From Salpingoeca rosetta (taxonomy: Eukaryota; Protista; Choanoflagellata): a stretch of DNA of 64,000 bases. Position numbers and translations under genes: made by a program. Positions within the stretch are counted from its first letter, which is position 1. Each line of letters begins with the position of its first letter. Below are positions 35,307 to 57,403 of this stretch, piece by piece. Location of the stretch: positions 408,724 through 472,723 of the forward strand of contig JAWQFM010000003.1 in NCBI GenBank assembly GCA_033442325.1, given 5' to 3'. The notes below the pieces were generated by a model. It did no database searches. It saw only the letters and a program-made list of their open reading frames with translations, and was not told the DNA's origin.

Positions 35307-36434
35307 CGTCCTGTCCTGAGCGTCGCTGAAATCGGCCAACTTGCACGAAGCAGCAGCAGGGGAGGAAGCAGGGAGACAGGCTGTGGGTTGGGAAGGTCCT
35401 CCGCGCTGGAGGTCTATAAATGCCTCCTTAGCCCTTGGGTTGTCGCGCTATGTGACTTTGCATCATGCCAGGCGACCCCATACACAACAAACGAGCTCAA
35501 GTAACCAGCAGCGAGGGCCCTTTCGGAACTCCCGGGGTAGGGGGACTTCGCGAAACTTTGCGAGGCACACGCATGCATGGGTGCTGTGGCTGGTGCTGAA
35601 GACGAATCTGCGAAAGGAACCCTACATTCCAAACCACACACAGAGATGTAGATGCAAACACAGACACAGACACACGCGCCGATTAAGACGCACAGCAGGT
35701 ACAGCAGGGGCAGGCGCGGAAAAGCCACTCGCGCGGCACATGCACGCCACTCACTCCTCGGCTGTTGACATGACACAAAAAAGACGTCACGGAGCAGATC
35801 GCAACCTTAGGAACGTTCAGGACTTTTGGGCCTTCAATCACAGCTCTTCTTCTTAGAACGCCTCTTCCGCGTGAACATGACGATACTGTGGCGAGTTGTT
35901 TTGCAGTCACTGTCACATCACATTAGCCTTACCCAAACACCTTGTTTGTACCTGCACAAGCACCACAGTCCACACGACTTGGCCCAGGGCATAACTCTGC
36001 AAATCTAATTCTTGTCATCATGTCATGTCACATCATAAAGCAACGCAATCCCCTCACCACCCGGTTCCGATCCTCTCTGGCCAGTGCGTGAACACCGGAC
36101 AGACGGTACACAAAGAGCAGAAGACTGAGTTCAAAACACGTCCCTCTCACATTCATACACCCGAACACACATTCTCTAACACACTCACACATTCACTCAC
36201 ACTCACTCACTATTCTCTCACACTCACACTCACTCTCGCATTCACTCTCACACTCACACTCACACTCACACTCACAAGCACACACATGTTATCCCAAAAC
36301 AAAAGACGAGCAAGAGTGTCAACTCAACAACCATCACGCACCCAGCAGCCCAAACAGTAACCCCTTCCCAAGCAACCCCATACCACACACACGCACACAC
36401 ACACACACACACACACGTAAGCGCGGTCGATCAA

Positions 36435-37741
36435 TTAAAGGTGCGTGTCAGCTATGGACATGCGGCGAAGCTCAACAGGCCTGACTGCAGATTCATCCAA
36501 GACCGGCAGCTGGCCAGCAGTGATGCGAGTGCTGTCCAGTGACGTGGGCTCCTCAAAGTCTGCAGTGTCGCCACTGGCGCCCTCTTGAAGATGAATGCCA
36601 GCGCGAGAGCCATCCGCACCAGCATCAAAGCGATGTCGATACTGCAGGTGCTCGTGTTGCGCATGCAAATCCACGGTGGTGCTTGGAGACATGTTGAGGG
36701 CCGTTTCATCCACGCCTTCGCCAATCACAAGGCCCGGCGCCGCAGTCAGCGCCGCAATCAGATCGTCAAACTCAGCAGTGGTGTCGTCCGCTCGCATGTA
36801 TGCCCCACTCTGTGCCGTGTCCAACGCAAAGGAGGCCCCCGCAGAATGCGATGAAGCCTTTGCTGGTGAGAGCGATGACTGTGACGGATCATCCAGGTAC
36901 TTTTGGAACGCCATGCTCGGGGATTGCAGGTAGCGCCCGTCCTTCTTGTCCAGGACCACGACGCCGCCCTGCTCGCTCCTCATCTCCAAAGCGTCTGGAA
37001 TGCCGACTGACGCCTTGCCACTGTGCCGCTGTCGGCGCAGAGTGATCACAACAGCCGCAAACATGAACACCGCGAGCAGCCACAGCGCCACCGCCCACAG
37101 CACGAGTGCCAGGGAAGAAAACAGGGCGCCAAACAGTACAGAAAGGCCGATGACGATGTTGATGCCAGCGGACACACGCAGATTGTACAGGGCGTCAAGG
37201 GTGGAGATGCCCTCGTCCTGCTCAATCGAGAACTGCTGCGCATTGAACCGGCAGTGCGATGCTTCGAGGCGCACGAGGCCGAACAGTGTCAGCAGCACCG
37301 CCACGCTGCACGGCGCAACAAAGGCCGCATACAATCCAATCTCTTGCTGAATGAACGACCTGCGACACCGCAACGCAGAATTGAGGAGGAGTGCGTCGTG
37401 TTGGTCGATGTATGTGTTGGTGGGTGTTGTGTTGGTCGTGGGTGAGACAACGCTCAGCATGTGCTTACACCATCGTGCACGCGTACAACAATACACACGA
37501 GCAAACAAGGAAAGCAACCCCACTCACGGCATGCGCAAACGGGCAAGCACAAATGTGTTGCACGTGTTTGATTTGTCACAGCAACTACATGAACACGCAC
37601 GTGTGCTTTCAAACCAGCGCACTGCATCCATACACATATCACATCATTCACGAGCATCCCTAGTCATTCACAAACAAGCACAGACACAAACACTCGAACA
37701 AACAAACACACACACACACACACAAACACAAGCACAACCAT

Positions 37742-37808
<67 letters not shown>

Positions 37809-40800
37809 AGCATAACCATGCACAAGTACATACGGCCCTGAGTCTTACATTCGCCCGAATCGGCCAACGTCGCCGTACGTGCCCGAAATACCAGTGTCGG
37901 AAGCGTCGAGGGCAATGCCAAAGTAAATAGCGACAATGAACGCTGGCACCACCCAGCACAACACGGACCACAACAGCGCCGAGCGCGCTCGCACAATGGC
38001 CGACACGTCAACAAGGTCGGCGCAGTACTCGCGAGTGCCTGCAAGCACGGCCGCCGTTGCCAGCGCCAGCGTCACCAGGAGCAGGTAGTGGGTCAGCATG
38101 CCGGCGGCAAACGCCAGCGTCTCGTCAACACTCGCACTGCGAACCGTATAGGCTCCGATGATGAAGAGCGAGCCCGCCAGGAACAGAGACACAAACGCCT
38201 GCGCGCGGTAGGAGCTGGCGCGACCGCGGCCCCACACCAGGTGTGTCAGCAGCAGCAGCACGCACCCAGCGAGCACAACGCCCGTGCCAGCCATGACAAC
38301 CAGCGGCACAGGGTCGGTGGTCTCCTCCAAGACGCCGTAGGTGTGTGCCATGTGCGTGCAGGCGCATTCCAAGGTGCCTTGGTCTCCAGCATCAATCGCA
38401 AGCTCGCACCCGTCTGTCAGCCACATGCCCTCGTCCCAGTACGCACACCGCGGCTGGCGCACCTCCCCTGCGCCAGCACTGTCCGGGCTGAACGCAAACG
38501 TGAAGGTGTTTGTGGGGCCAAGTTCCGCCAGGTCCTCATCCGCGACACTCGCGTGCACAAGGACGCCATCAACAGCCCGCGTGCGCGCAGGAACGGGGAA
38601 CGTGTTGTCCTGCGCAGCAAAAGCAATTGCCACCAGCGTGTTGCACTGACTGTCGTCCGTTTCGGTTGTGTTTGTACTGCCGCCAGAGAGCAGCGAGTCC
38701 AGCGGCTGCAGGACATCGCCCAGGAATGGCGGTGCGTGCAGCTCAACCGTGGTCGCTGCAACAGGGAGGGATGACACGCGCCCGCTGAGCGATGCGGGCC
38801 GCGCCCGGGTCACCTCCCACGTCGCCCGTTCGCCAACAAACGAGCGCGTGCAACAACAAGAACAGCCTGCACTGCCGTCAACGGCTTCGTCGCAGTCCAC
38901 CAGCAACGCAGCGCCAAACTTGCGCAGGAGCGTGTCGATCCAGGGCTGCGGCTGCCGCTGCAGCAGCAGCGCATCCACAACGCCCGCAACGGCCTGCAAT
39001 TCAACCACAGTTGCCCTCCTCCTCCTCCTCCTCCTCCACATTCCCTCGTCGTGGCCGGCCTGACGTGGATCAGGTTGTGTATGTGAAACGGCAGATGCAG
39101 CGCCAGCGCCAGCAGCAACATCAGTCGTGCTTGATGGCACCACCTCAGCGCTAGTGCCGACGAAGGCGTCCAAGATGTTGGACAGGGCGGCGTGCATGAA
39201 GAAGAGCGAGTCTGAGCACACGCGATCTGTCTCAGCAAGTCCACTGGCAATGTCAGCGACGCATGTGGTTGAGGAAGCAATGCCGTCGTCAAGCACGACG
39301 TCTGCGTTGGACAGCCCCAGGCAGCCTTCGGGAACCAGCACCACGCACACGGTCCCGTCATCGCCGTTGCGGCTCCCAAGCGTGCCAGCCACCGTGTTGG
39401 CGGCTCCGCCCTGGCTTGACAGCTTGTCTGCAAACACGACAGTGACGCTGGCAAGCCGGCGAGCTCCGAGACGCGCGCCCTGCAGCGTCGTGTTGGATGT
39501 CACCAGCTCCACCGTGAAGTTGCCAATCAGGCCAGCGCCAAGCGCATCCGCAGACGGAATGGTGAGCGCAATGCTGGCCGCTGTCTGCCCCGCCACTAGA
39601 GAAACGCTGCCTTGTATGGACACGCTCAAGGTGTCGAAGCGGCCGCGGAAGGCGCGGTACGAGACTGCAAAGCTGCTGTCCAGGCCTCCCGAGCGCTCAA
39701 CATCGAGCACGGCCTGGTTGTTGCGAACAAGCAGCGCCACACTGCCCTCTGCAAACTGCACAACGCCCAGCGGGTCGTCGCTGGCGGCGACGGTCACCAC
39801 CACGCTGTTGGCATTGCGCGTCAGCACAACCGGTGTGTCAACAGCGTCCACGCAGGGCAGACTGCTGCGGGAAGGACACGCAAGCACGCGCACCAGCTCC
39901 ACGACAAACACCTCCTCAAACTCAGGGATGGCGTCGTCGAGAATGTCAAAAGACAGCGTGCTTGTGTTCTGGCCAGGCGCAAACGCAACCACTCCACTTA
40001 CCGGCGACACATCATCACCAACCGCATCAGTGGCGCCTGCTCCTGCTGTTGCTGTTGCTGCTGCTGCTGCTGTACTTGCGATGGGCGTTGTCGATGCACC
40101 ATTCGTGACGCTGCCTGCCACACGGATCGCCCAGGACACCAGCAGGTATCCCGATGCACCGGGAACATATGACCCGCCAGACCGCACGAGGGTCAGGGAA
40201 GCGCGTGAAGATGCCGCTGCTGTCGCCGCTGTGGACGTTGTTGATGCGGACTCGAAAACGCGAAGCCCACTCGACGCCAGCGCCGCCTCAAACCCAACCG
40301 TGCCGTCAGCAACCTCTAGAGGAATGGCAAATGCTGTGCCGCGGGCACTGTCATCAATGGCCACGCCCGAGTTGTCCGAGGACACGGTGGCGCTGGCGAC
40401 ACGCACAAGCACGGTCCGGCCCGCGACCAGGGCCACGCTGTCGCTGATATCAAGCTGGAGGCTCTGACGGGCCTGACCCTCGCTCAACGTGACAGAGAAG
40501 ACGCAGTCACTGCTGATGGTGGCGACGCCATTGGCTAGGGGACAGCTGCTCAGGTCCGCCATCTCCTGTGCTGTGGGTACGGCGGTGGCTGTGGCAGTGG
40601 TGCTGTTGCTTGTGGGTCGCGCGTTCAAATCGACCACGCAGGTGACGACGACTTGATCCACGGTTCCAAACGAGCGCAGTACGTCAAAGACGACGAAACG
40701 GGGCGCCCGCTGGGCAACCTGCACCACTTTTGCAGGGGCGCTCATACCAACAATGCCGTATGGGTCATCGCTTGGGGGCACAACAATGGTGACGCTGCGC

Positions 40801-43551
40801 GCTGTGTCATCGATGCTGCCCTGGTCCGCCACGTCCGCCACAAGCCGCGTGAGGGACACAACAAACACCTCTTGCAGCTCAGGTGTGCTGTCACCAAGCA
40901 CCTGCAGCGTGAGCACAGCGCTCTGCTGACCCTGCACAAACTCCAGCATGCCAGATGGCGGGCTGATGTCCGTTGACACGTCCTGGGATTGGGTTGTTGC
41001 TGCCGCAGAGGAGGCCGTCACCTGCCAGAACACAGACACGGCTCCGAATAGGCCAGCGCTGCGCTGGACGGTGAGCTGCACCGGCGTGGTGGCTGCAGCA
41101 GTGCCCGCGCTGGGCTCCTCAACCACGATGCTCCCTGCACCCGCAAACGCAAACCTGCCAGCGGCATCGTCACTGGCTGCCAGGACCACGCGTGTGGTCG
41201 TGCGGCCCAGCACGGCCCCGCCAAACACCTGTGTGAGGCGAACAATGAACGACTCGCTCTGCTCTGGCTCGTCGTCATCGGTCAGGGCAACAGAAAAGGA
41301 GGCCACCACCTCTCGCGACGCCAGCGTCACCTCGCCCGACTGCACGGGGAAGTCTACCCCAGCCTGTGCTGCTGCTGTTGTTGCCGCTGCTGGTGAGGAG
41401 GATGTGCCCCGATCTTCCTCCTCCACCGTCCACAGCACGGTTATGTCCCCGTGCGTGGCCGTGTCGCGCAGCAGGGAGAGGGTCACTGTGCCCTGGCTCT
41501 CCTGCGCGCTCACCACGTCGCTGTCCAGCGACACGCGCCCGTACGTGAACACGCCCTCCGTCACAGAGAGTGCCGCCGTGCTGCGAGTAGCGTCAATACC
41601 GGGGACAATCCCAGCAGCGTATGCACTTGCAGATGTGGTGCCATCTGCCAGCGACACGCCCATCAGCTCCGCGCCGAGCGTGCCGGAAACCTCCAGTCTC
41701 AGCGCCTCTGGTATGGCTGCCTGCACCCGCACCGTTGTCTGTGCGGACGCGAATGTACCCGTGCCCGTGTGTTCCCACGTCGTGGCACTCACGTCCAAGA
41801 ACAGGCTTGCCACGGGGGCCGCGTACACCAGACGGTACGAAAACGTCAGCGGTCCAAACGTGCCGCCAGCGCGGTGCACGTCCAGCACAGCCGTGCGCGT
41901 TTGTGTGTCCAGGTCTGTGACGATTGCGATGCTGCCGTCAGACACTTCGTCCCTGTTGTTGGTACTGGAGACGTTTGCTCGCTCAAGGTAGAGGGTGCCC
42001 GCAGGGTTGTCGTTGGCAACCACGACGAGGGCAACAAGCTCAGTGGCAAGGCTGACCCACGTCGCGTTGTGGAGTGAGAAGGTCAGCAGGCACACTTCGT
42101 CCCGCTCAGGAAGCTCATCAGAGGGGATGTTGAGCACAATGTCCATGCTTTCTGAGACCGACACTTGGCCTTGCCGGGGCTCTGCACAGGGCACAGCGCT
42201 GGTGGGTGTACCTGAAGCAGCTGTCCCTGTTGCCTCCTCAACGCTGCTGAGTCGCCAGCGAAGTGTCGCAGGCAAGGCCGCGGATGCCGTTGTCGGCGCA
42301 AAGCGTCCATGCTCACGTTGCAGCCTCAGCGCGAGAGCTTCGCCTTCGTTGGCAATGACAACACCTGCCACACCACCGACCGTGACATCGCTTCCAGCGG
42401 CCACCTCGGCCAGATCTGGGCTGGCGAGCCGCACAACCCCTCCAGCAGCGCTCTCCGGCACCAGCGCCGTTGCCTCGAAGGTGTCGTACGTTTGCACCAC
42501 CACGGGAGCACCAGTCGAGGGCGAGGGTACCGTTGCTTGCACTTGTGTCAATGTGATGCGCAGTCGCGAATCGGTCACCAGCTTCGCATCCAGCGAAAGT
42601 GGCAGCCGCAAGAGCGCAGCGTGCTCTCCAGCCCGCAGAATTGTCACCGGATCTGCCTGCGCAATGTCGAGCAAGCCCTCCACAACGAGGAAGCTGTTGT
42701 CGCCGCCATCGCTGCTGTATGCCGCGGAAATGTGGGCAACAATGTCACCAAATGTTCCGCCTGCTCGGGTCACGTTGATGGTGACAAGGCGGCTGACTAG
42801 ATGACGATCAGATGTTGTGACACTGTTGTTTGCCTCATTCGATGTCGTAGCCAGCGTCACCTCCGCGGTGGAGGCAACGTGAAGGGCGCCAAATGGCTCG
42901 CCACTCGCTGCGATGGTAACGCGGACCTGGCTGTTGTTGTGCAGCAATGTAACGCCAGGGTTGCTCAGCTGCACGAGCGAAACGACAAACGTCTCTTCCA
43001 GCTCGTCTTCACCGTCGGCAACGCAGAGCACGCGAATACGTGTTGATACCACACGTTGTCCCTGGGTTGAGTTGAGCTGAACGGTCGAGAGTGATACGTC
43101 TGTCGAGATGTCCGCGCGTGTGGCTCCAGCCCCAATTGGGGACAGTGCCAGCTCTGCAATCAAATCATCATAGGCATCCGGCAGCCGACGCACAGCCAGG
43201 GTAATGACTTCGCCTTCCACGCATGTGATGGCACGCTCGCCGCCCTCCGTTTCCAAGAACACGCCGCCGCGCGGGTTGTCGCTTCCAGCGATGACCAAGT
43301 CAACATGCCCTCGCTCTGCGTCAATGTGTGGAGCAGATGCGACACTGGCAACGGCGGCATCGTCGCTGCTCTCTTGTGCGGCAGGCTCGGGATGGGAGGA
43401 CAGTGTGATGCGCACCTGCGCTGCCACCTCTGCAATGTCGTCGGGGTCAATGGTTAGCACAAGCGTCTGGGTGCCTTCGCCCTCATCAAATGTCAGCATG
43501 CCGGCCATTTCGCGCAGGACATGCTGCAGGGCGCTTGCACCACCACCACCA

Positions 43552-43588
<37 letters not shown>

Positions 43589-46500
43589 TTGTGGACGCGT
43601 TGGCTACGCTACCAACAACATCTGCCCGCCAGAACACAGTCGCCGCTGCCATCACAGGGCCCGTGCGAACAACCTTCAACAAAACCCGCACAGGATCTGC
43701 ATCCTCTGGCTCTGCGTACATGTGCTGCATGGCGAGGGTCTCTTGGGAGAAGGAGAACGTGCCGTAGTACCGGTCGTTGGCAGGCGTGGCAATGCGCAAG
43801 GACCGCCGACCTGCATCGCTGTCTGCACGTGCACCATCCTCCACAGCCACAATGGTGAGGGCAAGGGCCTCCTCCCCCTCGGGCTGCTGATCGTTGAGGA
43901 ACACCAGCTCAACTTCAGCCTCCGTCTGCCCATCGGTGAACTCAATCACCGCCCGTGGCAGAAACGCGTCACCCTCAACATGCACATTCTCAAGCAGGGC
44001 AATGTCAACGCTGGTACTTCCTGCATCACCCAGCATGTGAAGGAGCCAGGGCTCGGTGTGTAGCCCCGGTGCAGCTTCAAGCGTGGATGGCAATGCCGCG
44101 CCGTTCACCCAGGCCGAGTAGCCCAGATACGAGGTGTCGATGGCAGTGACGTGGTCACCCACACTTGCCTGTGCCACGGCTACAAAGCGACTGGCCTGCA
44201 CATCATACACGTAAGCCACAACGTGGTGCGCGCTGATGTTGTTGTTGCTGCTACTGCTGTTGTTGTTGTTGCTGTTGTTGCTGCTTGCATCTTCGTCTTG
44301 TTCGATGAGCGCAAGCAGTACTGGTGAAAACGACACACTGCTGCTGCCACTGCTACTGACATGATTGAGCGAAGATACACCACGTACACCAAAGGATGGT
44401 AGGCCAAGTTGGTCCACAACTGTGTCTGCGGAGAGAACAACAATGTGTACGGGCACCGTATCAGCAGCACCACCGTCTCGTGTCGAAAGCACCTCAACCA
44501 CCACTGGCGGCATATCAGGGTCACGCTTCACGCCGATGAGAAGCGCCCTCGTGTAGTCCTCCTGAGCATCTGCCCCACCAGCAAACACGTGTGTCCATTG
44601 TGCCACGCCGGCCAGGGCCATACTCACGTCCACAGGTTCACCGCTCTCGCTGGCAGCGGCATCAGCTGTCACCTGCAACTGCTCGAGGGTGCCTTGCGGG
44701 GTCACGACAAACGCGGCCGCCGTGCCGCTGTCCGCCGACGCAACAAGCAGCAGCGGAGACAACACCGTGGTCACGACCCCAACTTCTTCTGCTGTTGCTT
44801 CTGTTCCATCTGCACCAACACTGTGGCGGACAATGCCGGATGTAGCGTGGAAGCTCGTGGGGAAGACGCCCTCAACAACACTGGTCTCTGCCAGCGCGCC
44901 ATCCTCCGTGACGCGCAGCAGCTTGATCTGCCCCGTCAACTGCCCTTCGTCGTTGTAGTCGCTGCCAACCGCAACATACGCCGTGCTGTTGTTCACCGCA
45001 ATAAACGCCGTGCACGTTGGATTGACCGTGCTGAGGGTGGCGGTCGGCACCATAAACTCGCCGTCCAGCATGTACAGGGTGGACAGGGACGCCGAGGGGA
45101 TGATGCTGTTGCGCAGACTGAAGACGGGCAGAAAAACAAACACGTTTTGTCCAACACGCCCCGTGGCCAACGACCGCACGTCTCGGTTGCTCAGCACCTG
45201 CTGGGCTTGTGCCGGTGCAACTGTTGTGGCACCAATCTCGTCAGCATTGTTGTTGTTGTTGTTGTTGGTCTGCATCGCATAGAGAACAGTCTGCTGACGT
45301 GTCGCCACGACCGCAAACAGGGTGTCGCCTTCAGCAAACGTCACCACGGCTTCTGGCTCTGCCTGCATCTGCACCTGAGGCCACTCGGCCACAGAACGCA
45401 CCCAATCTGACAACACGCCTGTGCTGGAAGTAGCTGTTTCTGCGGACGGCGATGTCACTGTCGAAAACAGTGACGATGCCGCTGCATCTGTTTCTTCTGC
45501 TGTGTCTGCGATTGCCTGCTCAGCTGTGCGTGCAAGTGAGAAGGCGAATTGGCCGGCCGCGCCGGAAGCGCCTGTGGCCGTCTCAAAGTCGAGAGCAACA
45601 TGTACAGTCACGTTGCCAAAGGCCCCGCCCTGTGCCATATCACGCACAAGCAGTGCCGAGTACACACCCGCAGCCTCGTTGACCCTGACCGTGCCATCGC
45701 CAGCAACCACATCGCCATTCATGTGCACAATTCGGAACACACCACGCGCGTTGTCGTTCTCGGCAATCACGATGCGCGTCTCATCCAAGGACCCAACCTC
45801 TGGTGGCAGGGTGTAGCTCTGTACAGCTGGTGGCACCATCTCAGCCACGGAAGTGCCATCAGCCAAAGACAGGATCTCCAGCTGTGTGATGCGCACGTGG
45901 AACGCCTCTGCCAGCTCGGGATTCGTGTCATCAATCACGTCAATGTTCACGCCGACGGCGTCGCTTGTGGCCGGCAAATCCACGAACGTGGTGAGAAGCA
46001 CAAAGTCTTCCACGGGAACTGCGCGCTGACGCGCAGGGTCTTGCATGCTGCTGATGGCTTCCAAGTGCACGCGAACGGTGCCCAGGCTGCCGGAGCCTGG
46101 CGCGCGCACAACCGACAAGCGTTGTCCCTGGCGCAGTGCTGAGTCACCCTCCGTCGTGTCAACCTCAACCTGGGACAGCTCATACACGCCAAGGGCACTG
46201 TCGCTGCTCTGCACGTTCAGCAACACTTCCTGTCTTGCGCTGGGATCAAACACGCCGTTCTCAGACACAGACGTCAAGCGTAGCACAGCCTGCTGAGCCA
46301 GCTCTGGCACTGTGTCGGAGACCAGCTCCAGGTGAATCGGCAGCCGCCGTGTTTGCGCACCAAAGAAGGTCAGTTGGCCCGTGTGTGGTGGCAGAAACTG
46401 TGCCCGGGCTTCTCCCGTCAGCGCCCAGGTGACAACAAGTTCGCCACTCGTCGCAACGTCAAGTCGCTGAACCCACACTGTTGCGTTGCTGGACAGCCCG

Positions 46501-49500
46501 CTTGTGCCCACAGCTCCATCATCGCCATTGCCAGCCACCACCGTGCCGTCATCGGCTGCGTCTTCACTCAACAGGATGGCTGCGCCAGCCGCTTCAAATG
46601 CAACGCGATCGTCGTCGGGACGGGCGACAACCGCCACCTCGCTCTGTGCTGTATCCAGCTCCCCACCGTTGTATGTCCGCAAGAGCCTCAGCGCGTATGT
46701 GTTGATGACATTGGGAACACCGTCATCCAGCAGCTGCACATCAAAGGCTGCTTGCATCACCCCAACGCCCAGCGTCACGTTGCCCTGGGCGTGGTCAAAT
46801 CGTACTGCTGGTGCATCTGCCTCGATGCCGCTGCCAGCATGCACAATCTCCCATTCAACAAGAATCTCTTTAAGGGCGGCCACGGAACGTGCGACGCTGA
46901 TGTTGAACACATTGCCTTCTGCAGCGCTGATGCGCCTGGCACTGGTGCTGTTGGCCGCGCCGGCAACACTGACCAGCCCGCCCGGGTTGTCGCTCTCCTC
47001 AACTTCCAATCGGACCGTGCTGTTCCTGCCGCTGGTCACGCTGGCCACGCCGCTGGCGTTCACAAGGGACACGTCAAACTGCTGCACAATCTCGGGCACA
47101 GCATCATCCACCACAAACACATCAAAGCTCACGCGCATCTCACCCTCCGCAAACACAACGCAGCCCTCTGCAGGCGACAGCTGCTGCGCTACCGAGACAG
47201 AAGCTCCTGTGGCGTGCGTTGTTGAGTTGTCTGTCACCGTTGACATGGTATCCGTGCTCGCGTCTGACGTGGCTTGCTCCGCAGCAACCGCCATCGCCAT
47301 CCAGCACACCGTGGATGTGCCCTTGGTGCTGACAGACCGCTGCACATCAAACTGCACGCGCTGCCCTTCCGCGCCAGCCACAACAGCGACACTGCCTTGA
47401 CTTGGTGACGTCATTGCTGGCGGTGCCGCCGCTGCTGCTGAGAGAGAGAACAGGCCATTGACGTCATCGTTGGCAGCAACACCCACAATCGTGGGCGTTG
47501 CAACACATTCTGGGCCAGCACCTGGGTGGGTGTACCCTTGTGGCGAGACAAGCTCGCATTGCACGATGTCCACCACAGCCAGCTCCAACCCTTCGGGCAT
47601 GGTGTCATCTGCCAGCGGCAACACGACGAGCGCTTCCTCTGCGCCAGACGGAATCCGTACAGTAGCTGTCTGCGTGCTGCTGTTTTGCAAATCGGCCAGG
47701 GAGATGCTGCTGATACTGTCAGTCACTGTGGGGAACGCGTGCAGGTGAATGTCGAGAACGAACAGCAGTCCAAGATCCGTGGTTGCGCCCGTACTTGTGT
47801 TTGCACTTGTCACAGTGTCTTCCTCTGTAGCTGACACGACGAGGTGACCCGCCGCATCTTGGTCGTACAACAGGCACAGGTCACGTGTGCTGCCAGCAAG
47901 CACGAAGGCAGCGCACTCAAAGTCAGCCTGCGTCAAACATGCACGCGCGCACGCGACAGCGTCTTCATCGCCATCACGGGCAGGCACCATGGCCGTGAAG
48001 TTTAGCAGCGCTTCGGTGGTGGCTTGAGCTGCCCCAGACGTGGCGTTGTTCTTGCTGCTGCAGCCGCTTGTCATGGCGGTCGTGGAGTTTGTGGCTGTGG
48101 TTGTGGTGTTTGATTCTGGGCCCATGCTAGCCGTGTCCAAGCAGATTGGAATGGTGATGGGGGACTGCGACATGAACCAGTCAAGTGGGTCGAGGGGGCG
48201 AATGCGAACCGTCACATCCACCTCGCCCAGCAGCCCCAAACTGCGGACAACGCGCAGCGCCCCACCGGCAGGGCTGTCCTCACGCACAACCTGGTTCTCG
48301 GGAATGAAGAAGCGCCCAAAGTCGTATGCGTTATCGGATGGCAATACTGTCACGTTCGCTGTCTGTGCGCTTGCACGCACGCCCGCCATGGCGCCGGCCG
48401 TGGTGGACACCACATTCAGGGTGAGCTCAAACCACTCCGCACCCTCCGGCACCTTGTCGCCGACCACTCGCGCCGTGACGTTAACCTGCCTCTCCCCAGG
48501 CTGGAAGTGCACAATCACTGAGCCGTTGCTGACCGGCACAACGGAAGCAGTCGACGTCGATGGTGAGAGCACCACTTCGTGCGATGACGTTGTGCCGTCC
48601 GCCATGGACAGCACCAGTTCAACGCTCTCCGCAGCGCCCTGATCGCGCGTCACAGTCACAGTCACCACCTCGTCCTCCGCGGCCACGTACACGTGTTGGC
48701 TTGCGTGCTGGGTGGACTTCAAGTGCCACAGCGACAGGCCAAAGAGGCCCGCGGGAAAGTCGTCTTGAGCAACAGCAATGTCGATGACACCCATGTTGTC
48801 GACGCCTTGGACCTGTGCCATGCGTGCATCCATTGTCGTGGCGGGGAGGCTAAGCCCAAGCCGCACGGTGTAGTTGAAGTTTGCAGCCGTGTCATCACGA
48901 ACTTGCACGGCCACGTCGCTTTCGCGCTGGCCTTCTTCAAACACCACCCACGTGGGTGAAATACGGAGGTTGTTTGTGTCGGCCAGCGCAAACGTGGCCG
49001 TGTCCAGGACGCGAGCGTCGTGCTGCACTCCAACAAAGACGATGCTTGCATTCACGGCTACCAGCGCCCCACCCGTGCGGACGATATGCATGGTTGCGTT
49101 GTCGCCCTCGCTCAACTCCAGACGTGACTGCGCATACTGCACAGTGCCACCAGGAAAGTCGCTGTGGGCAATGCGCAATTGCGCTGTGTCTTGTTGGCCG
49201 AGCACGCCCTTGCTGCTGGGCGCAATGCTAAGCACCAAGGTGGCGCTCTCCGCGAGCTCGGGCACAGCGTCATCGGTGATTTCCACATCAAAGTGCAGCG
49301 TGGGCTGCGTTTCCTCGCCGTGCACGCCGGAAGCAAACACCAGTGTTCCGTTTAGCCCCGTCGACACCGCAAAGTCGCCTGCAGACGCAAGCCCCGCACT
49401 CCCCATGTTCGTGTCGTTGTGTGATGTTGCACGGCTGGATGTGTCAATGGCCCACATGACCATCGTGTCCTCAAACGTCCCGGCAAACCGGGTCACACCA

Positions 49501-52500
49501 ATGCGCGCCACTTGCCCTTCCTCAGTATGGACAATGGACGAGGCAAACGCGAACCGCCCATAAGGGTCGTCGCTCTCCTCAATCACCACCACGCGCTTCT
49601 CGGTGTTGCCGGTGCTGTCCGTGGCAATGCTCAGTGCACCACCAAGCGCGTCGCTGGCAGCAACTGCTATATCGTCATTGCCACTGCTGCTGCTGCCTGC
49701 GTCAGTGCTCAACACCAGCCGCGCGTTGCTCAGGTGCACAAACACCTGCTCCTGCACTTCAGGCAACTCGTCGTCGAGAATGTCAAGCGTAATCACCTTC
49801 TCCGCCTCACCTGCAGCAAAGTCGAGTGTCGTGTGCAGACCAACATAGTCCAGACCCTCCACGCTGGCATTGGCCGTGCTGTACGTCTCCCGAACATACA
49901 CCGTCCACTCGCTCAGGACATCAGCGATGTCGGAAATGCCCACAGTGGGTTCACGTTGAAGAGCAAAGAGCGCACAAGTGAAAGTGGAGGCGGCACCATT
50001 GCTGCCTCTGACATTGCGTGTATCTGTCGCGTTGAGATCAGCGGCATTACTGGTGGTGCTGTTGCTGGTGGTGTTGGGTTGAAACCAGCCAAACGCCACA
50101 CAATCGACGGTGGCGTTGGTGATGCACATGCTTGCACACTCCTCCACTTTGCTTGCAGCTGACCAGCTTGCAACGGTGACGTCGCTGACGTCCATGGTGC
50201 TGGTGCTATTCCCGCTGCTGTCGCCTGTGGTTGCGCTGGCGTTCTGAGTCTGTGCAAGCATTTCGGCCACATCAACCATTGCCATTGGCAAAGAAAAGAG
50301 TGACATCAACTCGTCTGCCGTGTCCACATCAACGAGAACACGACCCTCAGTGCCACGCAGCCGCTGCACGCGGATGGTCGCCTGCGACGACTCCCCATCA
50401 CCGCCCTCCGCCACCCGTGAGCGAAGCACCGCAAAGGAGAACAGGCCGTACGCGTTGTCGTTGGCTGCAATGCCAATGTCCAGTGATGCTGCGGCGCCTT
50501 GCGCCACAGAGATCTCGGCACCGCGCGCAGAGAGAATGAGCAGCGAAAACGCCTCGGGCAGTTCAGGTACCGTGTCATCGACGACAGTAAAGGCGAGGCT
50601 TGCTGTGGTTTGCCCAATTTCCAGCGTCGTCGTGCCGGCCGCAGGGACAATATCGCCAGTGTCCGGCTCAATCGCCCACTGCACCACGACGCGATCGTAG
50701 GCGGACGGTCCGCGGCGCAGGGTCGCCGAGAATGCAGCGCCCTCCTTCAGCGACAGCAGAGTGGGCGGTGCCGGTGCAAACGCCACAGCACACTCGGGGC
50801 AAGAGCGCAGCACGAATGTCGCCTCGTCACGCACAACGCGGCTTTCACCCAGGCTGTTAGTGACGTTGACAATGTACACGGTCAGCCCTTGCCCGTCAGG
50901 GATGTCTGCCACGACAGAGGCACTGAGAGGCACCACCACTGTGGCGCGGTCGCTGTCAGCAGCATCGCCATCAGTTACCTCACCAAACCACCTTGCTGGA
51001 AACACCACGGTGGCACGGAAGCGGCTCAGGTCGTGTGTGGTACTGCGCTGTGCTGCTGTGGCGCGAGCAGCAAGCTGCACGACGACGTCACCGTAGTATC
51101 CGACGCTCCTCTGTACGGTCACAGTCACGTTTCCTTCTCCGCGCAGAACATCCACTGCACCCAGCGGCTGTACGAGCTCAAGCACGCCATATGCGTCGTC
51201 GCTGGAGTCCACTACCACCGCAGCATCCAGCAGCACAGTGCCCGCACCAACGACCGTCGCGCCTTCACTGCCACGCCGCGCAGGCAGGAGGGGGATGAGG
51301 GATCCAGTACCGGAAACTGCTGTACTGGATGCTGTTGTGGCTGTCAGGGACAGCGTGCCTTCCTTTGGCAGCTCAGGTACCGTGTTGTCCACCGGGGCAA
51401 GCGTGAACCCTGCCTCTGTCTGGCCGTGGGCAAGCACCACTTGCTGTGGAAACGTCAAGTCGTCCATGCGCAAGGTGGCGCTTTCTCCCTGCTTGATTCT
51501 GGAGATTTGCTCCGAGGCCGCGCCCAAGGAGACGTTCAGGTACACGGCACCAAATGAGCCAGCAACACGCTTCACAGACAGCACGGCAACGGTGTTGCCT
51601 GTCTCAGCCAGCGTAACCATGGCTCTTGTCCCGTTGGAGCTGCTATCAACACTGATTTGTGCTTCACCGCTGTTGATGCGCGTCGTATTGACACTCGTGC
51701 CATTGCTGTGGATGGTTGTGTTGACGTACTCCCACAGCAGGACGCCAAAGCGCGCCTCTTGGGGTGGCGTGACGAGAGTGGTCACGCGGGGACCAAGGCG
51801 CGGCGAGACCCCCTGTGGTGTTGTCACTACCGTGCCATCCTGCTGCTCCACAGAGATGACGGTTACGCAGAAGCGTGTGTTCTCTGCGAGCGACAATGAA
51901 AACGTGTCGGGAATGGGCACATTCGCTGATGCGACTGCCTGCCCTTCCGCAAATGGCACTTGCACAACCTCCTGCAGACCTTCCTCCGCCACGGAAACAC
52001 AGCCGGCGTTGTTGTGGTCAATGTGCAGCCGCACGCGTGCGCGAATGTCGGAGAAGAGCCCTCCAGAGCGTGCCAGTGTAAAGGACAGGTTGCGGTGCGT
52101 TGCAGATGCGATCACGCCGGCAGCAGCAAGGTCAACCACGCCATGGGGGTCGTCATTGGGAAGAATGGTCACAATGGCCGTCGATGCGTCCTGGGCAATG
52201 CTTGACGCACCAGGCGTCTCGCCCAAGGTCACCGCTGCCACTTGCTCAAGCTCCGGCACGCTGTCGTCCACAACGCGAAGCGTCAGCGTGGATGTGCTTT
52301 GGCCATCCTCAAACCACACGCTGCCATTGTGCGGTTGCAAAGAGGCTGCAGCGCCGCTGCCATCGGTGCTGACCGTGAACGGGACCGCCAGGCGCCCAAG
52401 CGTGCTCACTGTGCGCTGCACCGACAAGGTGATGGTGCGGTTTGTCTCTGCCACCGTATTCAGCCCAAGGACGAGCGACGCCGGTGCGAAGCGAAAGAGC

Positions 52501-55500
52501 CCACGCGCGTTGTCGTTTTCCGGGATGCGCACCAGCGTGTGGGTCGGGGCACCTGCTACCATAGCGTCCAGCTGCAGGTCCTCTGCTGCTAGCGTGCCCG
52601 CCCCGCTCACGACAGAGCCCAGCTTCACAACAAAGCCTTCGTCCAGCTCGGGCTGGCCGTCGGCTGCGATGGCAAACGCAACCTGCGCCACTTGCTGTCC
52701 GGGTGCAAACACCACCGTCGCAAGCAGCTCATCAACGGAGACCGGCACCAGAGACACAGCGCTGTTGCTGCTGCTGGTGGTGGTGCTGGCGGCGGCGGTG
52801 CCAGAGTTGTTATTGATACTGTCTGATGCTGTCGCTGAGAGGGAAAAGTCGCTGCCGGCAAGCGTGGGAAGAACGCGTGTTGGATTCAGGGTGCTTCTAT
52901 AGGCAGCGTCGCCGCCCAGTGGCGTGGCGATGTGCTGCTCCGTGCCGTTCACCAGCACATGCAAAGTGACCCGCATGCTGCCAAACAGGCCGCCGCGCCT
53001 GACGATGCCAACCTGGGCACGCTGACCCTCGCTCGACACAACAAGCGAGGAGAGGAGCTCGGGGCGCCCGTACGGGTCGTCGTTCTCCAGGATGGCCACC
53101 TGCAGCACGTCGCCGGCCATGATTGCTGGCTCAGCGGGCTGCGTGGCGGTCGTCTCAAGCAGCACGGGCGAGCCCAGCACAACCCACACCACTTCGGTCA
53201 CCTCTGGCACAGCGTCCTCAAGCACGCTTAGCACAAGTTGCTTGTGCGTTTCGCCGTCCTCGAAGATGACGCTGCTTGTGCTCAACAAAACGTCGCCACC
53301 GGGACCGGTGTCGGCAAAAGCTGAGGCCGTTTGGTTGTAATCATAGTTTGCATTCGGCGCTGCTGCGCCATTGTCAGGGTCACCGCCATCGTCGCTGCTT
53401 TGGTTCTGCAGCTCCCGCGCCCCAATGAGCTCCACAGGAACCTGCACAGTGCCCTCGGTGCCAAACGTGCGCGTCACGGAGATGGTGACGGCTGCCGGCT
53501 CTGACACCGCCACCGCACGGATAACGCGCAGGGTAAAGGTGCCTTGCTCCACGGAAGGAACAACGGTGCCATCAGCCGACAGGTGGACGTCAAATGGAGC
53601 CGAGGTGTCGTCGAACGCGACATGAGCACCGCTTGCACCGGTGATGTTGGCGCTGAAGAGCCCGTGTGGGAAGTCGCTTGCCTCCAGGGTGATGCTGGCC
53701 AGGATGCGCTGTGCATCGAAGCGCGCGCCACCGCTCAGCTCCGTCAGCGCAAGCACAAACTCGTCCTGGTACTCTGGGATTGTGTCGTCCTCGATGCTGA
53801 TGATGATGGGAACAGAGGCGACGCCTTGCTCAAGCACCACCACCCCAGATGTCGGGTGCAGTGCGGTGATGGTGCTAGTTAGGGCAGACCGGAGCTCCCA
53901 GCCAACCGTTGTGCGGCCCACTGTACCTTGGGCGCGGTGCACAAACACCGTCATGCTGCCGTCTTCCTCCTGAACCCGCAGCGTGAGCGAGTCGTTGCGA
54001 ACGCCAACCACCCCATACGGGTCGTCGCTGGCGAGGACTGTCAGTGCAACGGTGCCATTTGTGATGCCACTATCGCTGCTGCCGTCGTCACCGCCACTGC
54101 CATTCGCAGCATACTCCGCGTCGGTTTTGAGCCTCGCACCACCGGTGGCGTTGATCAGCCGCAGTGTAAAGGCAGCGTCCAGCTCGGGAAGCGTATCGTC
54201 AGCGACGGAAATTGCAATGGATGCTTCCCGCACACCATCCCCAAAAGTAACCACGCCACTGCTACGCACAAAGGCTGGTGGCGGTGCTGTCGTTGTCATT
54301 GTTGTTGTTGTTGGTGGTGGTGCTGGAGACTGCGGGACAATCTCCCACTGGGCCTGCACAATGCCAAAGGCGCCGCGTGTGCGAACAACGGGCACCAGCA
54401 GCGTGCTCGGAGCAATCGCCCCTGTACCTTCCTCGCCGGGCGATGGGGGTTCTGCAAGCGTAACAGAGGCACCAAAGTCGGGTGCGATGGCCAGAACACC
54501 ATTTGCATCGTCACTCGCAGGCACGACAATTGTCTTGCGCGTGCCTTGGGGCGCAAAGGCCGACTGGTTTGTGTAGCCGCCAGAGATGCTGGTGAGCGTG
54601 AGGATGTGCGTGCTCTCCAGCTCCGGCACATCGTCGGGGACGATGGGGACAACCAGTGTGGCGTTGATGGCCGCTTCTTCAAACGTCAGGGTGCCGTTGA
54701 GGGTGGAGAAGCTCGCGGCGTCACTCGTGGCGAGGTGCCACGCAACCTCCACTGCACCAAACGCACCCGCATTGCGTTTGACGACAATGCCGGCGGGTTG
54801 CTCGCCCGCTTCGGGCTCACGCACGACCACAAGCGCTTGGTCCGGCTGCTCAAAGGAGAAGACGCCCGATGCCATGTCGTTGGCGGGAATCACGACCGTG
54901 CAAACGGTCTGGTTGCCGAGGGCGGTGGCGTGGGTGAGGTCCTGATTGATGGGCCGCACGCTCTCGAGCACAAGCTGCAGTGCCTCGTCCGCCTCGGGCT
55001 CGTCGTCGTGCAGGACGGTGACGCTGACCGCCTGTGATGCCTGACCCTCCGTGAAGAGGAGTGCAGAGACGGCGTCAATGTAGTCCACCCCACGCGAGGC
55101 GGCCGCAATGCCAGGTGCGCCCGCCAGGATGCGGTAGCGCACAAGCACGCTGCCCCTTGTTGTCGTGCGCGTGATGGCGACGGACGCCGTGCGGAAGAGA
55201 TCGTTCGACGGCTCAGGCACGGAGACATACGCGGCGCCCAGCTCAAACACGCCCAGGGGCGCGTCACTCGCTTCAATGGCAAAGTCGATTGCGAATGCGC
55301 TGGGGTGCGCCGTGGAGATGACGGCGCCGTTGGTGGCGTTGCCGAGCGTCAGCGTGAACACCTGCCTCAGCTCCGGGATGTCATCGTCAGTCGCAGCGAT
55401 GACAATGTGCCCGGTCGTCTGTACGTCCTCAAACACGAGCGTGCCGCGCCAGCTGTCCAGGTTGTCCGCAGGGGACCCAAATTCCACCACGTCCGGGGAT

Positions 55501-57305
55501 GCCGATGCCAGTGCTGCCGCTGACGGTGCCACGCGCCAGTCCACGGTGACGGTGCCGTGCGTTCCCCACAGGCGCTGCACGGCGACGCTGAGCGGGTGCG
55601 TGCTGCCTTCCAGCAGACTGATGGAGGCGGTGTCTTCGAGCTGCAGCAGGCCGTTTGGGAAGTCATTGCGCGGTACGATGACCCGCGCCGTCGTGCTTGT
55701 GCCCAGCGCTGCCTGGTCTGCGCTGAAGCTGATGCTGCTGGCCCGTGTCAGCTGCAGCGCCCACTCCTCCGTAAACTCTGGGATGTCATCCGCGGCGACT
55801 TCAAACTCGAGCAAGGCCCATGTTTGGCCTGGCTGAAACCCCAGCACGCCCGATCTCGGCGCGGACGCTGTGTTGTTGGACGTTGCTGCCCACTCGAGGC
55901 GTGCCTCGCCAAACGCGGCGCCGGTGCGGGTAACGTTGAAGATGGCCACGTGCGGCTGCAGTGCGTCCTCATCGGGCTCTGCAATGACAACCACGGGTGA
56001 AGCACCGCTGCTGGCGGTTGCGGTGTTGAGCTGAAACTGGAATTGGCCGCCAGCGACGTCGCTCGCTTGGATGACGACGAGCATGGACGAGTTTTCAAAC
56101 ACACGCGCTGCGGCGGTGCCTTCGGCGGTACCAGACAGCGCCAGAGTTACAACAAAGGCCTCGTTCGGCTCCGCGACAGCGTCCGTGCTCAGCGGTACGA
56201 GGACGGTTGCCGTTGTTTGGCCCTCTGCAAAGGTGACAACCCGAGAGACAGGGGTGTAGTCCTGCGCTGGTGTTGCTGTTGCGAGGACGAGCGGGTCGTC
56301 CGCGAACCAGTCGAAGCTGCTCTGGACGGCGGCAGAGACCGCACTGGCGTCGCTGGTTGTCTCGACGAGGACCTGCGCCGTACCCAGCGCGCCGGAAGCA
56401 CGGGCAATGGTGAGGGCGGCGGCGTGGCTGGCGGTGCCTGTTTTCTCGCGCACGCCCAGCTCTGCCAGGGCGAAGGAGAAGCTGCCCAGCGGGTAGTCAT
56501 TGGCGCTGATGACGACGTCCATGCTGGTCAGGTCGGAGTTGGCGGAGAGGGAGGCGCCGCCGCTGACAACCTGGGTGAGGCTGAGCACAAACGACTCCTG
56601 CAGCTCAGGCACGTCATCGTTGATGACGGGAATGATGAGGTTGACGGAGGAGTCGCCCTGGTCGAAGACGAGGGTGCCCGATGCGAGGGCAAAGTCGTCC
56701 TCGCCGCCGCCGATCTCCCACGCCACGGTCTGCTCGCCAAAGCGGCCGCCAGACCGCCCAATGACGGCAATGAGCGCGCTGCCCTCGCTTGTGACGGTGG
56801 GCCCGCTGGGACCACCAAAGTTGATGAAGGCGATGGTGCCGTACGGATTCTCGTTGAGCGGGACGGTGACGGTGAACGCGTCCTGGGCTATGGAGACGCC
56901 GGAAACGGGCGCAAGGAGGCTGAGGCGCAAGGCGAAGGTCTCGTTGAGCTCTGGCCCATCGTTTGACTCAACCACAAACACCCACGACGCAGAGGAGCTG
57001 CCGGCAAACAGGGCAAACTGTGCCTGCATGGGGAAGAAGTCGTCAGACTCCAGCGTCTGCGTCTGGATGGGGTCGACGGTGATCTCAACAATGACGTTGC
57101 TGGGCAAGGGCTCCGATGCGGACACGAGCACGGACAGGGCGTCGCCTTCCCGCGCAACGGCGCAGTCCTCGCCCTGCGCCAAGGAGGCGCATTGCCTCTG
57201 GATGCTCAGCTGTGTTGTGGCGTGTGCGGGACTCACGACACAGAGCGCAAGCAGGCACAGCATGGCCACCACACGTGCCATCGCTGGCCACCTTTCCGCT
57301 GTCAT
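36435..57305 (-). CDS. ADGRV1: ADGRV1/VLGR1-like giant adhesion GPCR (~6,793 aa): signal peptide, ~30-35 Calx-beta repeats, EAR-like propeller region, two PAN/apple-like inserts, GPS, 7TM, PDZ-binding tail; exons 57305-37849 and 37359-36435
   Basis: Signal [21 protein letters not shown]. About 28 clear DDxPExxE.F.V.L / I..NDxPxG motifs by manual count, plus degenerate copies. [17 protein letters not shown]...CACTHM. Seven TM segments across the AT|GTAAGA...CGCAG|G junction. Tail contains EFDDLIAAL and ends [13 protein letters not shown]. Confidence 0.92.

Positions 57306-57367: not shown

Positions 57368-57403
<36 letters not shown>

What the first reader, a model, noticed from the sequence alone, without database searches (positions are those of the whole stretch)
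36435..57305. Complete ADGRV1/VLGR1 (Usher 2C)-like receptor in an apparently unicellular holozoan
Seen: size (~6,790 aa), ~30+ Calx-beta repeats, an internal propeller-like region, GPS and 7TM match the ADGRV1 layout. Established: vertebrate ADGRV1 forms stereocilia ankle links and the photoreceptor periciliary complex together with usherin, whirlin and PDZD7. Inference: an ancestral Usher-type link or mechanosensing system on the microvillar collar or flagellar base. Surveys of holozoan adhesion GPCRs may already list this gene, so novelty must be checked.
Basis: partly seen in the sequence, partly recalled or inferred. Interest (0 to 1): 0.8.

Follow-up and report, generated by a model that had tools for sequence, protein, structure and literature searches.

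The report
Choanoflagellate ortholog of ADGRV1 receptor
The gene is real, complete and expressed: it is the Salpingoeca rosetta counterpart (PTSG_11855) of the animal Usher-2C receptor ADGRV1/VLGR1, but such choanoflagellate orthologs are already published, so it confirms known biology.

Summary
Window 57305..36435 (minus strand) encodes one 6,793-aa protein in two exons. RNA-seq confirms the single 489-nt GT-AG intron. The protein matches S. rosetta PTSG_11855 (annotated "hypothetical protein") except for 8 N-terminal residues.

Layout: signal peptide, 28 Calx-beta repeats, a 414-aa non-Calx region, 11 more Calx-beta repeats, GAIN/GPS, 7TM, and a 200-aa tail.

The strongest ADGRV1 signatures are in the tail: EFDDLIAAL, and a C-terminus [13 protein letters not shown] against vertebrate VELRRIPIADTHL. 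The 7TM tree is compatible with ADGRV (94/92), but an AU test does not exclude other placements. Only the first blade of the "propeller" resembles the vertebrate EPTP domain. There is no LamG/PTX domain. The GPS reads HM|A, so autoproteolysis is unlikely.

Choanoflagellate ADGRV orthologs (aGPCR subfamily theta) were reported by Garcia De Las Bayonas & King 2025, Peña 2016 and Krishnan 2012. The kind is therefore already known. A role at the collar or flagellum remains untested.

The scan also holds an unchecked note of a similar ADGRV1-type receptor on another piece of this genome (s1-432417). A separate note on the tail motifs covers this same window (s1-433446).

The parts
37849..57305 (-). 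Coding exon 1 (6,485 codons plus 2 nt): signal peptide through TM4 and the first half of extracellular loop 2.
   Evidence: Single ORF. Translation. Identical to PTSG_11855 from its Met 9 onward.
57219..57305 (-). Predicted signal peptide (29 aa, ending ..SPAHA). The NCBI model starts at the second Met, 8 codons downstream.
   Evidence: Read from the sequence. The start codon was not resolved by reads.
45294..57167 (-). Calx-beta repeats 1-28.
   Evidence: Pfam PF03160, E 3e-58. Iterated self-HMM. Consensus motif.
44052..45293 (-). Central 414-aa region without Calx-beta repeats, beta-rich with low-complexity N/S runs. It sits where vertebrate ADGRV1 has its EPTP/EAR propeller.
   Evidence: Gap in the repeat map. 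No Pfam hit. Single-sequence AlphaFold failed, pLDDT 33. Protein-language-model neighbours include EPTP/LVIVD clusters at 0.90-0.92, but recognition is low.
44892..45101 (-). A 70-aa stretch resembling the first EPTP/EAR blade of vertebrate ADGRV1 (..[13 protein letters not shown]..).
   Evidence: BLASTP to sturgeon ADGRV1, E 4e-4. hhalign against 11 vertebrate EPTP regions: probability 52%, E 1.5e-4, 66 columns.
39426..44051 (-). Calx-beta repeats 29-39.
38322..39266 (-). GAIN domain: helical subdomain A and beta-sandwich subdomain B, ending in the Stachel strand TYGVLEE.
   Evidence: AlphaFold model built with a 55-sequence alignment. Foldseek matches include full-length CD97 (E 2e-12) and the BAI2/BAI3 GAIN domains.
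38349..38366 (-). GPS core CACTHM, followed by A (P1' = Ala rather than Ser/Thr).
   Evidence: Pfam GPS, E 1e-6. Motif comparison.
37851..38303 (-). TM1-TM4 and the start of extracellular loop 2 (YGDV motif).
37360..37848 (-). The only intron: 489 nt, GTAAGA...CGCAG, phase 2, containing (GT)n microsatellites.
   Evidence: Sequence. 36 spliced RNA-seq reads in 3 runs.
36435..37359 (-). Coding exon 2, including the stop codon: rest of extracellular loop 2, TM5-TM7 (37023-37358) and a ~200-aa cytoplasmic tail.
36747..36773 (-). EFDDLIAAL motif, a candidate whirlin-NTD-binding helix (NBM-like).
   Evidence: Identical EFDDLI core in 12 vertebrate ADGRV1 sequences and 4 environmental relatives. An NBM is described in PMC10039067. 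Equating this motif with that NBM is my inference.
36438..36455 (-). C-terminal IADTHL, a class I PDZ-binding motif.
   Evidence: Identical last 6 residues in vertebrate ADGRV1. DTHL is documented as the PBM of ADGRV1 and USH2A (PMC10039067, PMC5896214).
35992..36434 (-). 3' UTR, up to the poly(A) site.
   Evidence: Read depth, and untemplated T-runs at 35992.

Best explanation
This is the S. rosetta ortholog of metazoan ADGRV1/VLGR1 (gene PTSG_11855), a member of the published choanoflagellate adhesion-GPCR subfamily theta.

Shown here:
- A secreted N-terminus.
- 39 tandem Calx-beta domains interrupted once by a ~414-aa beta-rich module.
- A GAIN domain with a GPS.
- A seven-helix adhesion-GPCR core.
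- A tail bearing EFDDLIxAL and a terminal -IADTHL.

Inferred mechanism:
- The Calx-beta chain forms a long, Ca2+-stiffened extracellular filament.
- The GAIN-7TM anchors it in the plasma membrane.
- The tail docks it to a whirlin/harmonin-type HHD-PDZ scaffold through a helix plus a PDZ ligand, as in the vertebrate ankle-link complex. That would tie the filament to the actin-based cortex.
- Because the GPS reads HM|A (no Ser/Thr nucleophile), the receptor is probably not self-cleaved. Any signalling would then be non-dissociative.
- A location at the microvillar collar is plausible but untested.
For: Gene model and expression.

Identity to PTSG_11855.

Calx-beta repeats.

GAIN, GPS and 7TM fold.

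Link to ADGRV1:
- In a word search on the 7TM plus tail, the only long database protein found was a sturgeon ADGRV1.
- The pairwise alignment runs through GPS, all seven TMs and the tail (24% identity, E 3e-12). EFDDLIAAL aligns with EFDDLIFAL, and [13 protein letters not shown] with VELRRIPIADTHL.
- Both motifs are invariant in 12 vertebrate ADGRV1 sequences. They recur in the environmental sequences closest to the query, and none of the non-ADGRV-like hits carries them.
- Only those closest relatives carry Calx-beta repeats.
- In the 7TM tree the query clade and vertebrate ADGRV1 lie together, opposite 35 G-, E-, L- and CELSR-like receptors, with support 94/92.
- Both share a YG.V motif in extracellular loop 2 and a Tyr in the Stachel.
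- The first-blade EPTP similarity sits at the equivalent position.

Literature:
- Subfamily theta is orthologous to ADGRV, with 83% bootstrap and NTF similarity (PMC12716839).
- VLGR1 is present in choanoflagellates (PMC4942974).
- The DTHL PBM and an upstream NTD-binding helix bind whirlin (PMC10039067).
- Whirlin homologs are reported in choanoflagellates (bioRxiv 10.1101/161695).
Against: - The 7TM alone is not diagnostic. There is no Pfam 7tm_2 hit.
- A profile of the query clade scores vertebrate ADGRV1 no better than other adhesion GPCRs. Against PDB it finds ADGRG2 at 1e-25 but not ADGRV1 9fte.
- An AU test does not reject placing the clade with G/E-like receptors (p 0.32).
- The V-like sequences all sit on long branches, so attraction is possible.
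- Individual Calx repeats are not collinear with sturgeon repeats (rho 0.25, p 0.12).
- No LamG/PTX domain is present.
- The propeller is unproven beyond one blade.
- There are no localisation, binding or signalling data for this protein. I could not check the S. rosetta whirlin-like partner with these tools.
Confidence: 0.8

Rival explanations
1. It is an ortholog in sequence but a passive adhesin in function. The 7TM would serve only as a membrane anchor for a non-cleaved Calx-beta filament, with no G-protein signalling.
For: - The GPS P1' residue is Ala.
- The S. rosetta 7TM lacks several residues that are near-universal in adhesion GPCRs: the TM3 and ECL2 cysteines, the TM3 WM..E motif, the TM6 TW..G motif and the TM7 NSLQG motif.
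- It fails the Pfam 7tm_2 model.
- Its terminal branch is long and its composition is skewed.
Against: - The seven-helix core is predicted with high confidence and matches active and inactive adhesion-GPCR structures.
- The reading frame is intact and the gene is expressed.
- Non-cleaved adhesion GPCRs can still signal (review PMC13729602).
- The alignment of TM6/TM7 at ~20% identity is uncertain.
Confidence: 0.25
2. It is a convergent look-alike: an adhesion GPCR that gained Calx-beta repeats independently by domain shuffling and is not orthologous to ADGRV1.
For: - 7TM placement is not decisive.
- Repeats are not collinear.
- LamG/PTX is absent and EPTP unproven.
- Domain shuffling is common in choanoflagellate aGPCRs (PMC12716839).
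Against: - Two independent short motifs in the disordered tail are identical to vertebrate ADGRV1, including 11 of the last 13 residues.
- These motifs, the Calx repeats and the 7TM clade all coincide.
- The first-blade match lies at the equivalent position.
- The published tree, with broader sampling, recovers orthology.
Confidence: 0.07
3. It is a metazoan contaminant or a recent horizontal transfer, not a choanoflagellate gene.
For: None found.
Against: - It lies on a 2.24-Mb S. rosetta scaffold.
- It is expressed and spliced in RNA-seq runs carrying the same species label as the DNA holders of this stretch.
- It is only ~24% identical to animal ADGRV1.
- It has 2 exons against 90 in the human gene.
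- Base composition is similar to the flanks, somewhat higher within the gene.
Confidence: 0.01

Closest known systems
Vertebrate ADGRV1 / VLGR1 / GPR98 (Usher 2C)
   Same: - Giant size.
- Signal peptide.
- Two blocks of tandem Calx-beta repeats separated by one non-Calx module whose first blade resembles EPTP.
- GAIN/GPS and 7TM.
- Tail with EFDDLIxAL, ending in ..ELRRxxIADTHL.
- YG.V motif in extracellular loop 2 and Tyr in the Stachel.

   Different: - By the same HMM it has 39 Calx repeats (28 + 11) against 42 (26 + 16) in sturgeon.
- No LamG/PTX domain.
- The central module is 414 aa against ~250 aa, and only one blade is recognisable.
- The GPS is HM|A rather than HL/M|S.
- The TM3-ECL2 cysteine pair and several 7TM motifs are lost.
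- The spacer from EFDDLI to the C-terminus is 106 aa against 44 aa.
- It has 2 exons against 90 in the human gene.
Choanoflagellate adhesion-GPCR subfamily theta (Garcia De Las Bayonas & King, eLife 2025, PMC12716839)
   Same: The paper describes choanoflagellate aGPCRs whose 7TM groups with metazoan ADGRV (83% bootstrap) and whose full-length NTF and CTF are homologous to ADGRV. This gene fits that description, and S. rosetta was in their survey.
   Different: The supplementary lists were not readable here, so I could not confirm that PTSG_11855 is the listed member. The main text does not discuss whirlin or the PDZ ligand.
Sponge VLGR1 and usherin orthologs expressed in choanocytes (Peña et al. 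2016, PMC4942974)
   Same: Evidence in a collar-cell context: VLGR1 is enriched in sponge choanocytes. The same paper states that VLGR1 is present in choanoflagellates.
   Different: The wording of that paper implies usherin was found in sponges but not in choanoflagellates. No expression or localisation data exist for the S. rosetta protein.
Other adhesion GPCRs (ADGRG2/G6, ADGRL3, ADGRE5)
   Same: GAIN-7TM fold. These are the best sequence-profile and Foldseek matches for the 7TM.
   Different: They have no Calx-beta ectodomain and neither the EFDDLI nor the IADTHL tail motif.

Membership tests
Adhesion GPCR (class B2) | GAIN domain with a GPS motif immediately before the 7TM | tested here: met
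   Pfam GPS, E 1e-6. The AlphaFold model shows the helical subdomain A and the beta-sandwich subdomain B. Foldseek hits include full-length CD97 and the BAI2/3 GAIN domains.
Adhesion GPCR (class B2) | Seven-helix core of the secretin/adhesion type | tested here: met
   Seven helices at pLDDT 85-95. Best PDB matches are ADGRG2/G4/G6/G1, ADGRV1 and ADGRL3, with TM-scores 0.63-0.79 relative to the target. The clade profile hits ADGRG2 at 1e-25. The Pfam 7tm_2 model itself gives no hit.
Adhesion GPCR (class B2) | Autoproteolysis-competent GPS (His, Leu/Met, then Ser/Thr). This is accessory, since many members are uncleaved. | tested here: not met
   The sequence reads C-A-C-T-H-M-A, so P1' is Ala. 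Vertebrate ADGRV1 reads H-L/M-S. Actual cleavage cannot be tested with these tools.
ADGRV (subfamily VIII) | Ectodomain built mainly of tandem Calx-beta repeats | tested here: met
   39 repeats.
ADGRV (subfamily VIII) | EPTP/EAR beta-propeller inserted between Calx-beta blocks | tested here: inconclusive
   A 414-aa insert sits at the right position, and its first ~70 aa match vertebrate blade 1 (E 4e-4 and 1.5e-4). A generic blade HMM scores at noise level. There is no Pfam EPTP hit, the fold prediction failed, and no homologs were found to deepen the alignment.
ADGRV (subfamily VIII) | LamG/pentraxin domain. This is a feature of vertebrate ADGRV1; I do not treat it as family-defining. | tested here: not met
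   There is no gap in the N-terminal repeat map and no Pfam LamG hit. The same repeat HMM leaves a 153-aa gap in sturgeon ADGRV1, whose precomputed Pfam list includes Laminin_G_3.
ADGRV (subfamily VIII) | 7TM groups with ADGRV in phylogeny | tested here: inconclusive
   The maximum-likelihood tree puts the query clade and vertebrate ADGRV1 on one side of a 94/92 branch. An AU test does not reject an alternative placement (p 0.32), and profile scores do not discriminate. My sample held no named A-, B-, D- or F-type receptors and no named invertebrate ADGRV. The published tree gives 83% bootstrap.
ADGRV (subfamily VIII) | C-terminal class I PDZ ligand -DTHL | tested here: met
   The protein ends ..[10 protein letters not shown], with the last six residues identical to 12 vertebrate ADGRV1 sequences. 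The motif is documented in PMC10039067 and PMC5896214. Binding cannot be tested with these tools.
ADGRV (subfamily VIII) | Conserved helix motif upstream of the PBM (EFDDLIxAL; candidate whirlin NTD-binding motif) | tested here: met
   The motif is present, with the EFDDLI core identical to vertebrates. Equating it with the published NBM is an inference, because the paper's text gives no sequence.

The most novel reading that the evidence does not exclude
The vertebrate two-part whirlin-docking tail of ADGRV1 (an amphipathic EFDDLIxAL helix plus the -IADTHL PDZ ligand) was already in place before animals arose. In S. rosetta it would couple an uncleaved, Calx-beta-based intermicrovillar or peri-flagellar link to a whirlin/harmonin-type HHD-PDZ scaffold. 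The core of the USH2 ankle-link complex would then be a collar-cell invention older than usherin and older than GAIN self-cleavage in this lineage.
Probability: 0.3. Interest if true: 0.6.

Novelty: already known. Interest (0 to 1): 0.3.

Why it matters
ADGRV1 is the only metazoan adhesion-GPCR subfamily with clear orthologs in choanoflagellates. In vertebrates it builds the stereociliary ankle links and the periciliary links that are lost in Usher syndrome 2C. A genetically tractable unicellular model carrying the same receptor, and apparently the same scaffold-docking tail, could show what this giant receptor did before sensory cells existed. That idea and the gene family's presence are already in the literature.

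- a verified two-exon gene model with expression;
- a count of 39 repeats;
- the absence of LamG/PTX;
- a probably uncleavable GPS;
- loss of the TM3-ECL2 cysteine pair;
- near-identity of both tail motifs.

Tried and rejected
- Pfam on the split and the spliced 7TM gave no 7tm_2 hit.
- Word-index searches on GAIN-TM4 found only the protein itself.
- Single-sequence AlphaFold of the central region was unusable, pLDDT 33.
- A generic EPTP-blade HMM built from 66 vertebrate blades detected nothing above shuffled controls in the central region.
- A metagenome scan for relatives of the central region was blank.
- A test for repeat-by-repeat collinearity with sturgeon ADGRV1 was not significant.
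- The supplement of the eLife paper was not held, so listing of PTSG_11855 could not be confirmed. No paper text mentions PTSG_11855.
- I considered contamination or horizontal transfer and rejected it.
- The many plus-strand ORFs inside the gene are dismissed as by-products of high GC. The RNA-seq is strand-specific for the minus strand.
- The list returned contained a human ADGRV1 entry. I did not use it in any comparison and used only non-human vertebrate sequences.
Full report
**Observation**

The minus strand of the window holds one uninterrupted ORF from 57548 to 37845 and a second from 37523 to 36435. The first in-frame ATG with a signal-peptide-like sequence is at 57305.

At the 3' end of the long ORF a GTAAGA donor begins at 37848, and a CGCAG acceptor ends at 37360. 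Joining 37849 to 37359 keeps the frame (phase 2) and gives ..GRFGR-M-SFIQQ...

Three strand-specific RNA-seq runs, which carry the same species label as the DNA holders of this stretch, show this junction in 36 reads. Depth is 5-60x on the gene's strand and near zero on the other, and untemplated T-runs mark a poly(A) site near 35992.

The spliced product is 6,793 aa. It is identical to NCBI "hypothetical protein PTSG_11855 [Salpingoeca rosetta]" (6,785 aa, on a 2.24-Mb scaffold), except that the database model starts at the second Met.

**Anatomy**

Pfam finds Calx-beta (E 3e-58 in the first third of the protein) and a GPS.

An HMM seeded on the best Pfam Calx-beta match and iterated on the protein itself converges on 39 repeats, with domain E-values from 4e-6 to 1e-28. 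There are 28 repeats before and 11 after a 414-aa stretch that contains none. The repeat consensus shows the canonical Calx-beta pattern, V.R.GG..G ... DD.vPE.E.F ... D.

I aligned the region downstream of the last repeat with 54 relatives. It folds with pLDDT 72.7 and pTM 0.71 into a helical GAIN subdomain A, a beta-sandwich subdomain B ending in the strand TYGVLEE, and seven long helices at pLDDT 85-95. Foldseek's best PDB matches are:
- full-length CD97 (E 2e-12, 606 aligned columns);
- the 7TMs of ADGRG2, G4, G6 and G1;
- the 2026 ADGRV1 cryo-EM structure 9fte (20% identity);
- ADGRL3;
- the BAI2/BAI3 GAIN domains.

**Is it ADGRV1-like?**

The tail is the clearest evidence.
- A word-index search with the 7TM plus tail, among proteins of comparable length, returned only the protein itself and a sturgeon ADGRV1-like protein whose Pfam domains are 7tm_2, Calx-beta, Laminin_G_3 and EPTP.
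- Pairwise, the two align from the GPS through all seven helices into the tail (24% identity, E 3e-12). EFDDLIAAL aligns with EFDDLIFAL.
- The extreme C-termini align as [13 protein letters not shown] against VELRRIPIADTHL, 11 of 13 identical.
- Both motifs are invariant in 12 vertebrates from shark to mammals.
- An exhaustive phmmer search of 1.8 billion representatives with GAIN+7TM (tail excluded) gave 50 hits. The top environmental fragments (P0003, P0012, P0019; also P0004 and P0007) carry EFDDL[IL] and/or -IADT[HR]L. None of the G-, E-, L- or CELSR-like animal receptors in the list does.
- Only the tail-motif sequences long enough to reach the ectodomain contain Calx-beta repeats.

The 7TM itself is weaker evidence.
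- It fails Pfam 7tm_2.
- A tree of 55 GPS-7TM segments (LG+C20+F+G4 PMSF) puts S. rosetta with six environmental sequences (97/90). It puts that clade and vertebrate ADGRV1 (plus P0042) on one side of a branch, with all 35 other receptors on the other side (94/92).
- All V-like sequences are long-branched.
- An AU test does not reject joining the S. rosetta clade to a G/E-like subclade (delta lnL 3.6, p 0.32).
- A profile of the S. rosetta clade scores vertebrate ADGRV1 (55-83 bits) no higher than other adhesion GPCRs (45-93 bits).
- Against PDB that profile finds ADGRG2 at 1e-25 but not the ADGRV1 chain 9fte.
- My sample lacked named A-, B-, D- and F-type receptors and named invertebrate ADGRV.
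- The alignment does show two features shared by the S. rosetta clade and vertebrate ADGRV1 and absent from the nine other sequences displayed with them: a YG.V motif in extracellular loop 2, and Tyr in place of the canonical Phe in the Stachel.

**The "propeller"**

The 414-aa insert lies where vertebrate ADGRV1 has its EPTP/EAR domain.
- For an EPTP identity: its first ~70 residues align to the first vertebrate blade (BLASTP E 4e-4; hhalign against 11 vertebrate EPTP regions, probability 52%, E 1.5e-4). Language-model neighbours include EPTP/LVIVD propeller clusters at 0.90-0.92, but recognition is low.
- Against or neutral: Pfam finds nothing. A generic blade HMM scores at the level of shuffled sequence. 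Single-sequence folding failed. A metagenome scan found no relatives.

I rate this feature as likely but unproven.

**Differences from vertebrate ADGRV1**

- There is no LamG/PTX domain. The repeat map has no N-terminal gap, whereas the same HMM leaves a 153-aa gap in sturgeon.
- Individual repeats are not collinear between the two proteins (rho 0.25, p 0.12). The arrays have been remodelled, or are too diverged to match one to one.
- The GPS reads H-M-A where vertebrates read H-L/M-S. With no nucleophile at P1', canonical autoproteolysis is unlikely.
- The S. rosetta clade has lost both cysteines of the TM3-ECL2 pair. S. rosetta itself also lacks the WM..E, TW..G and NSLQG motifs.
- The gene has one intron, against 90 exons in the human gene.

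**Mechanism**

By homology with vertebrate ADGRV1, I infer:
- a Ca2+-binding Calx-beta filament projecting from the membrane;
- a GAIN-7TM anchor and possible transducer;
- a tail that docks to a PDZ scaffold.

In vertebrates the -DTHL ligand, together with a ~20-aa helix upstream of it (the NBM), binds the PDZ1 and N-terminal domains of whirlin (PMC10039067). The invariant EFDDLIxAL motif 44 residues from the vertebrate C-terminus is the obvious candidate for that helix, but this equation is my inference.

Whirlin homologs are reported in choanoflagellates (bioRxiv 10.1101/161695). An unchecked scan note describes an HHD-PDZ-PDZ protein in this genome (s1-433359). I could not examine either with the tools at hand.

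Where the receptor sits (collar, flagellar base or cell-cell contacts) and whether it signals are both untested.

**Novelty**

- Peña et al. 2016 state that VLGR1 "is even present in choanoflagellates" and show that it is enriched in sponge choanocytes.
- Garcia De Las Bayonas & King 2025 define choanoflagellate subfamily theta as the one aGPCR group orthologous to a metazoan subfamily, ADGRV. They report homology of both NTF and CTF, and cite Krishnan 2012 for earlier detection.
- The 2026 IUPHAR review repeats this.

The gene is in GenBank, so the finding is correct but already known. I did not find the tail-motif conservation, the HM|A GPS or the lost cysteine pair discussed in those texts. 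These are modest additions.

The scan also holds a note on the tail motifs in this window (s1-433446, confirmed here) and a note of another ADGRV1-type receptor elsewhere in this genome (s1-432417, not checked).

Noticed in passing
window 37690-37815 (inside the intron) and 57330-57548 (just upstream of the ATG): Long (GT)n/(CA)n microsatellites on the gene's strand. One fills much of the only intron. The other lies in the presumed 5' leader, where it reads as a THTHAH.. pseudo-peptide in frame. The reads tool skipped 37669-37819 as a repeat.
   Followed up: no
window 37849/37359 (the exon junction): The single intron interrupts the invariant YGDV....SFI motif of extracellular loop 2, a motif specific to the S. 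rosetta-type clade. The other 19.5 kb of coding sequence has no intron. The human gene has 90 exons.
   Followed up: partly
P0012 and P0019 (environmental relatives from Logan and JGI assemblies): These ADGRV-like fragments keep EFDDLI and -IADTHL but lack the GPS histidine altogether (C.CSVI / C.CSKV). Others in the clade have Gly or Lys at P1'. Loss of a cleavable GPS appears common in this clade.
   Followed up: partly
window 35400-35800: Run X22 alone shows 13-16x RNA-seq coverage downstream of the poly(A) site. It lies just beyond the 5' end of the neighbouring minus-strand ORF 32919-35339, so it may be that gene's 5' leader, expressed depending on condition.
   Followed up: no
window 26001-28000: A 2-kb stretch of markedly lower GC (0.46 against 0.53-0.64 elsewhere in the window).
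   Followed up: no
Same genome, other pieces (scan notes s1-433359, s1-433368, s1-432417): Unchecked first-reader notes describe an HHD-PDZ-PDZ scaffold fused to a WH2 tail, a Calx-beta/EAR plus cadherin receptor with a PDZ ligand, and a second ADGRV1-type receptor. Together they would make a candidate Usher-type module set in S. rosetta.
   Followed up: no
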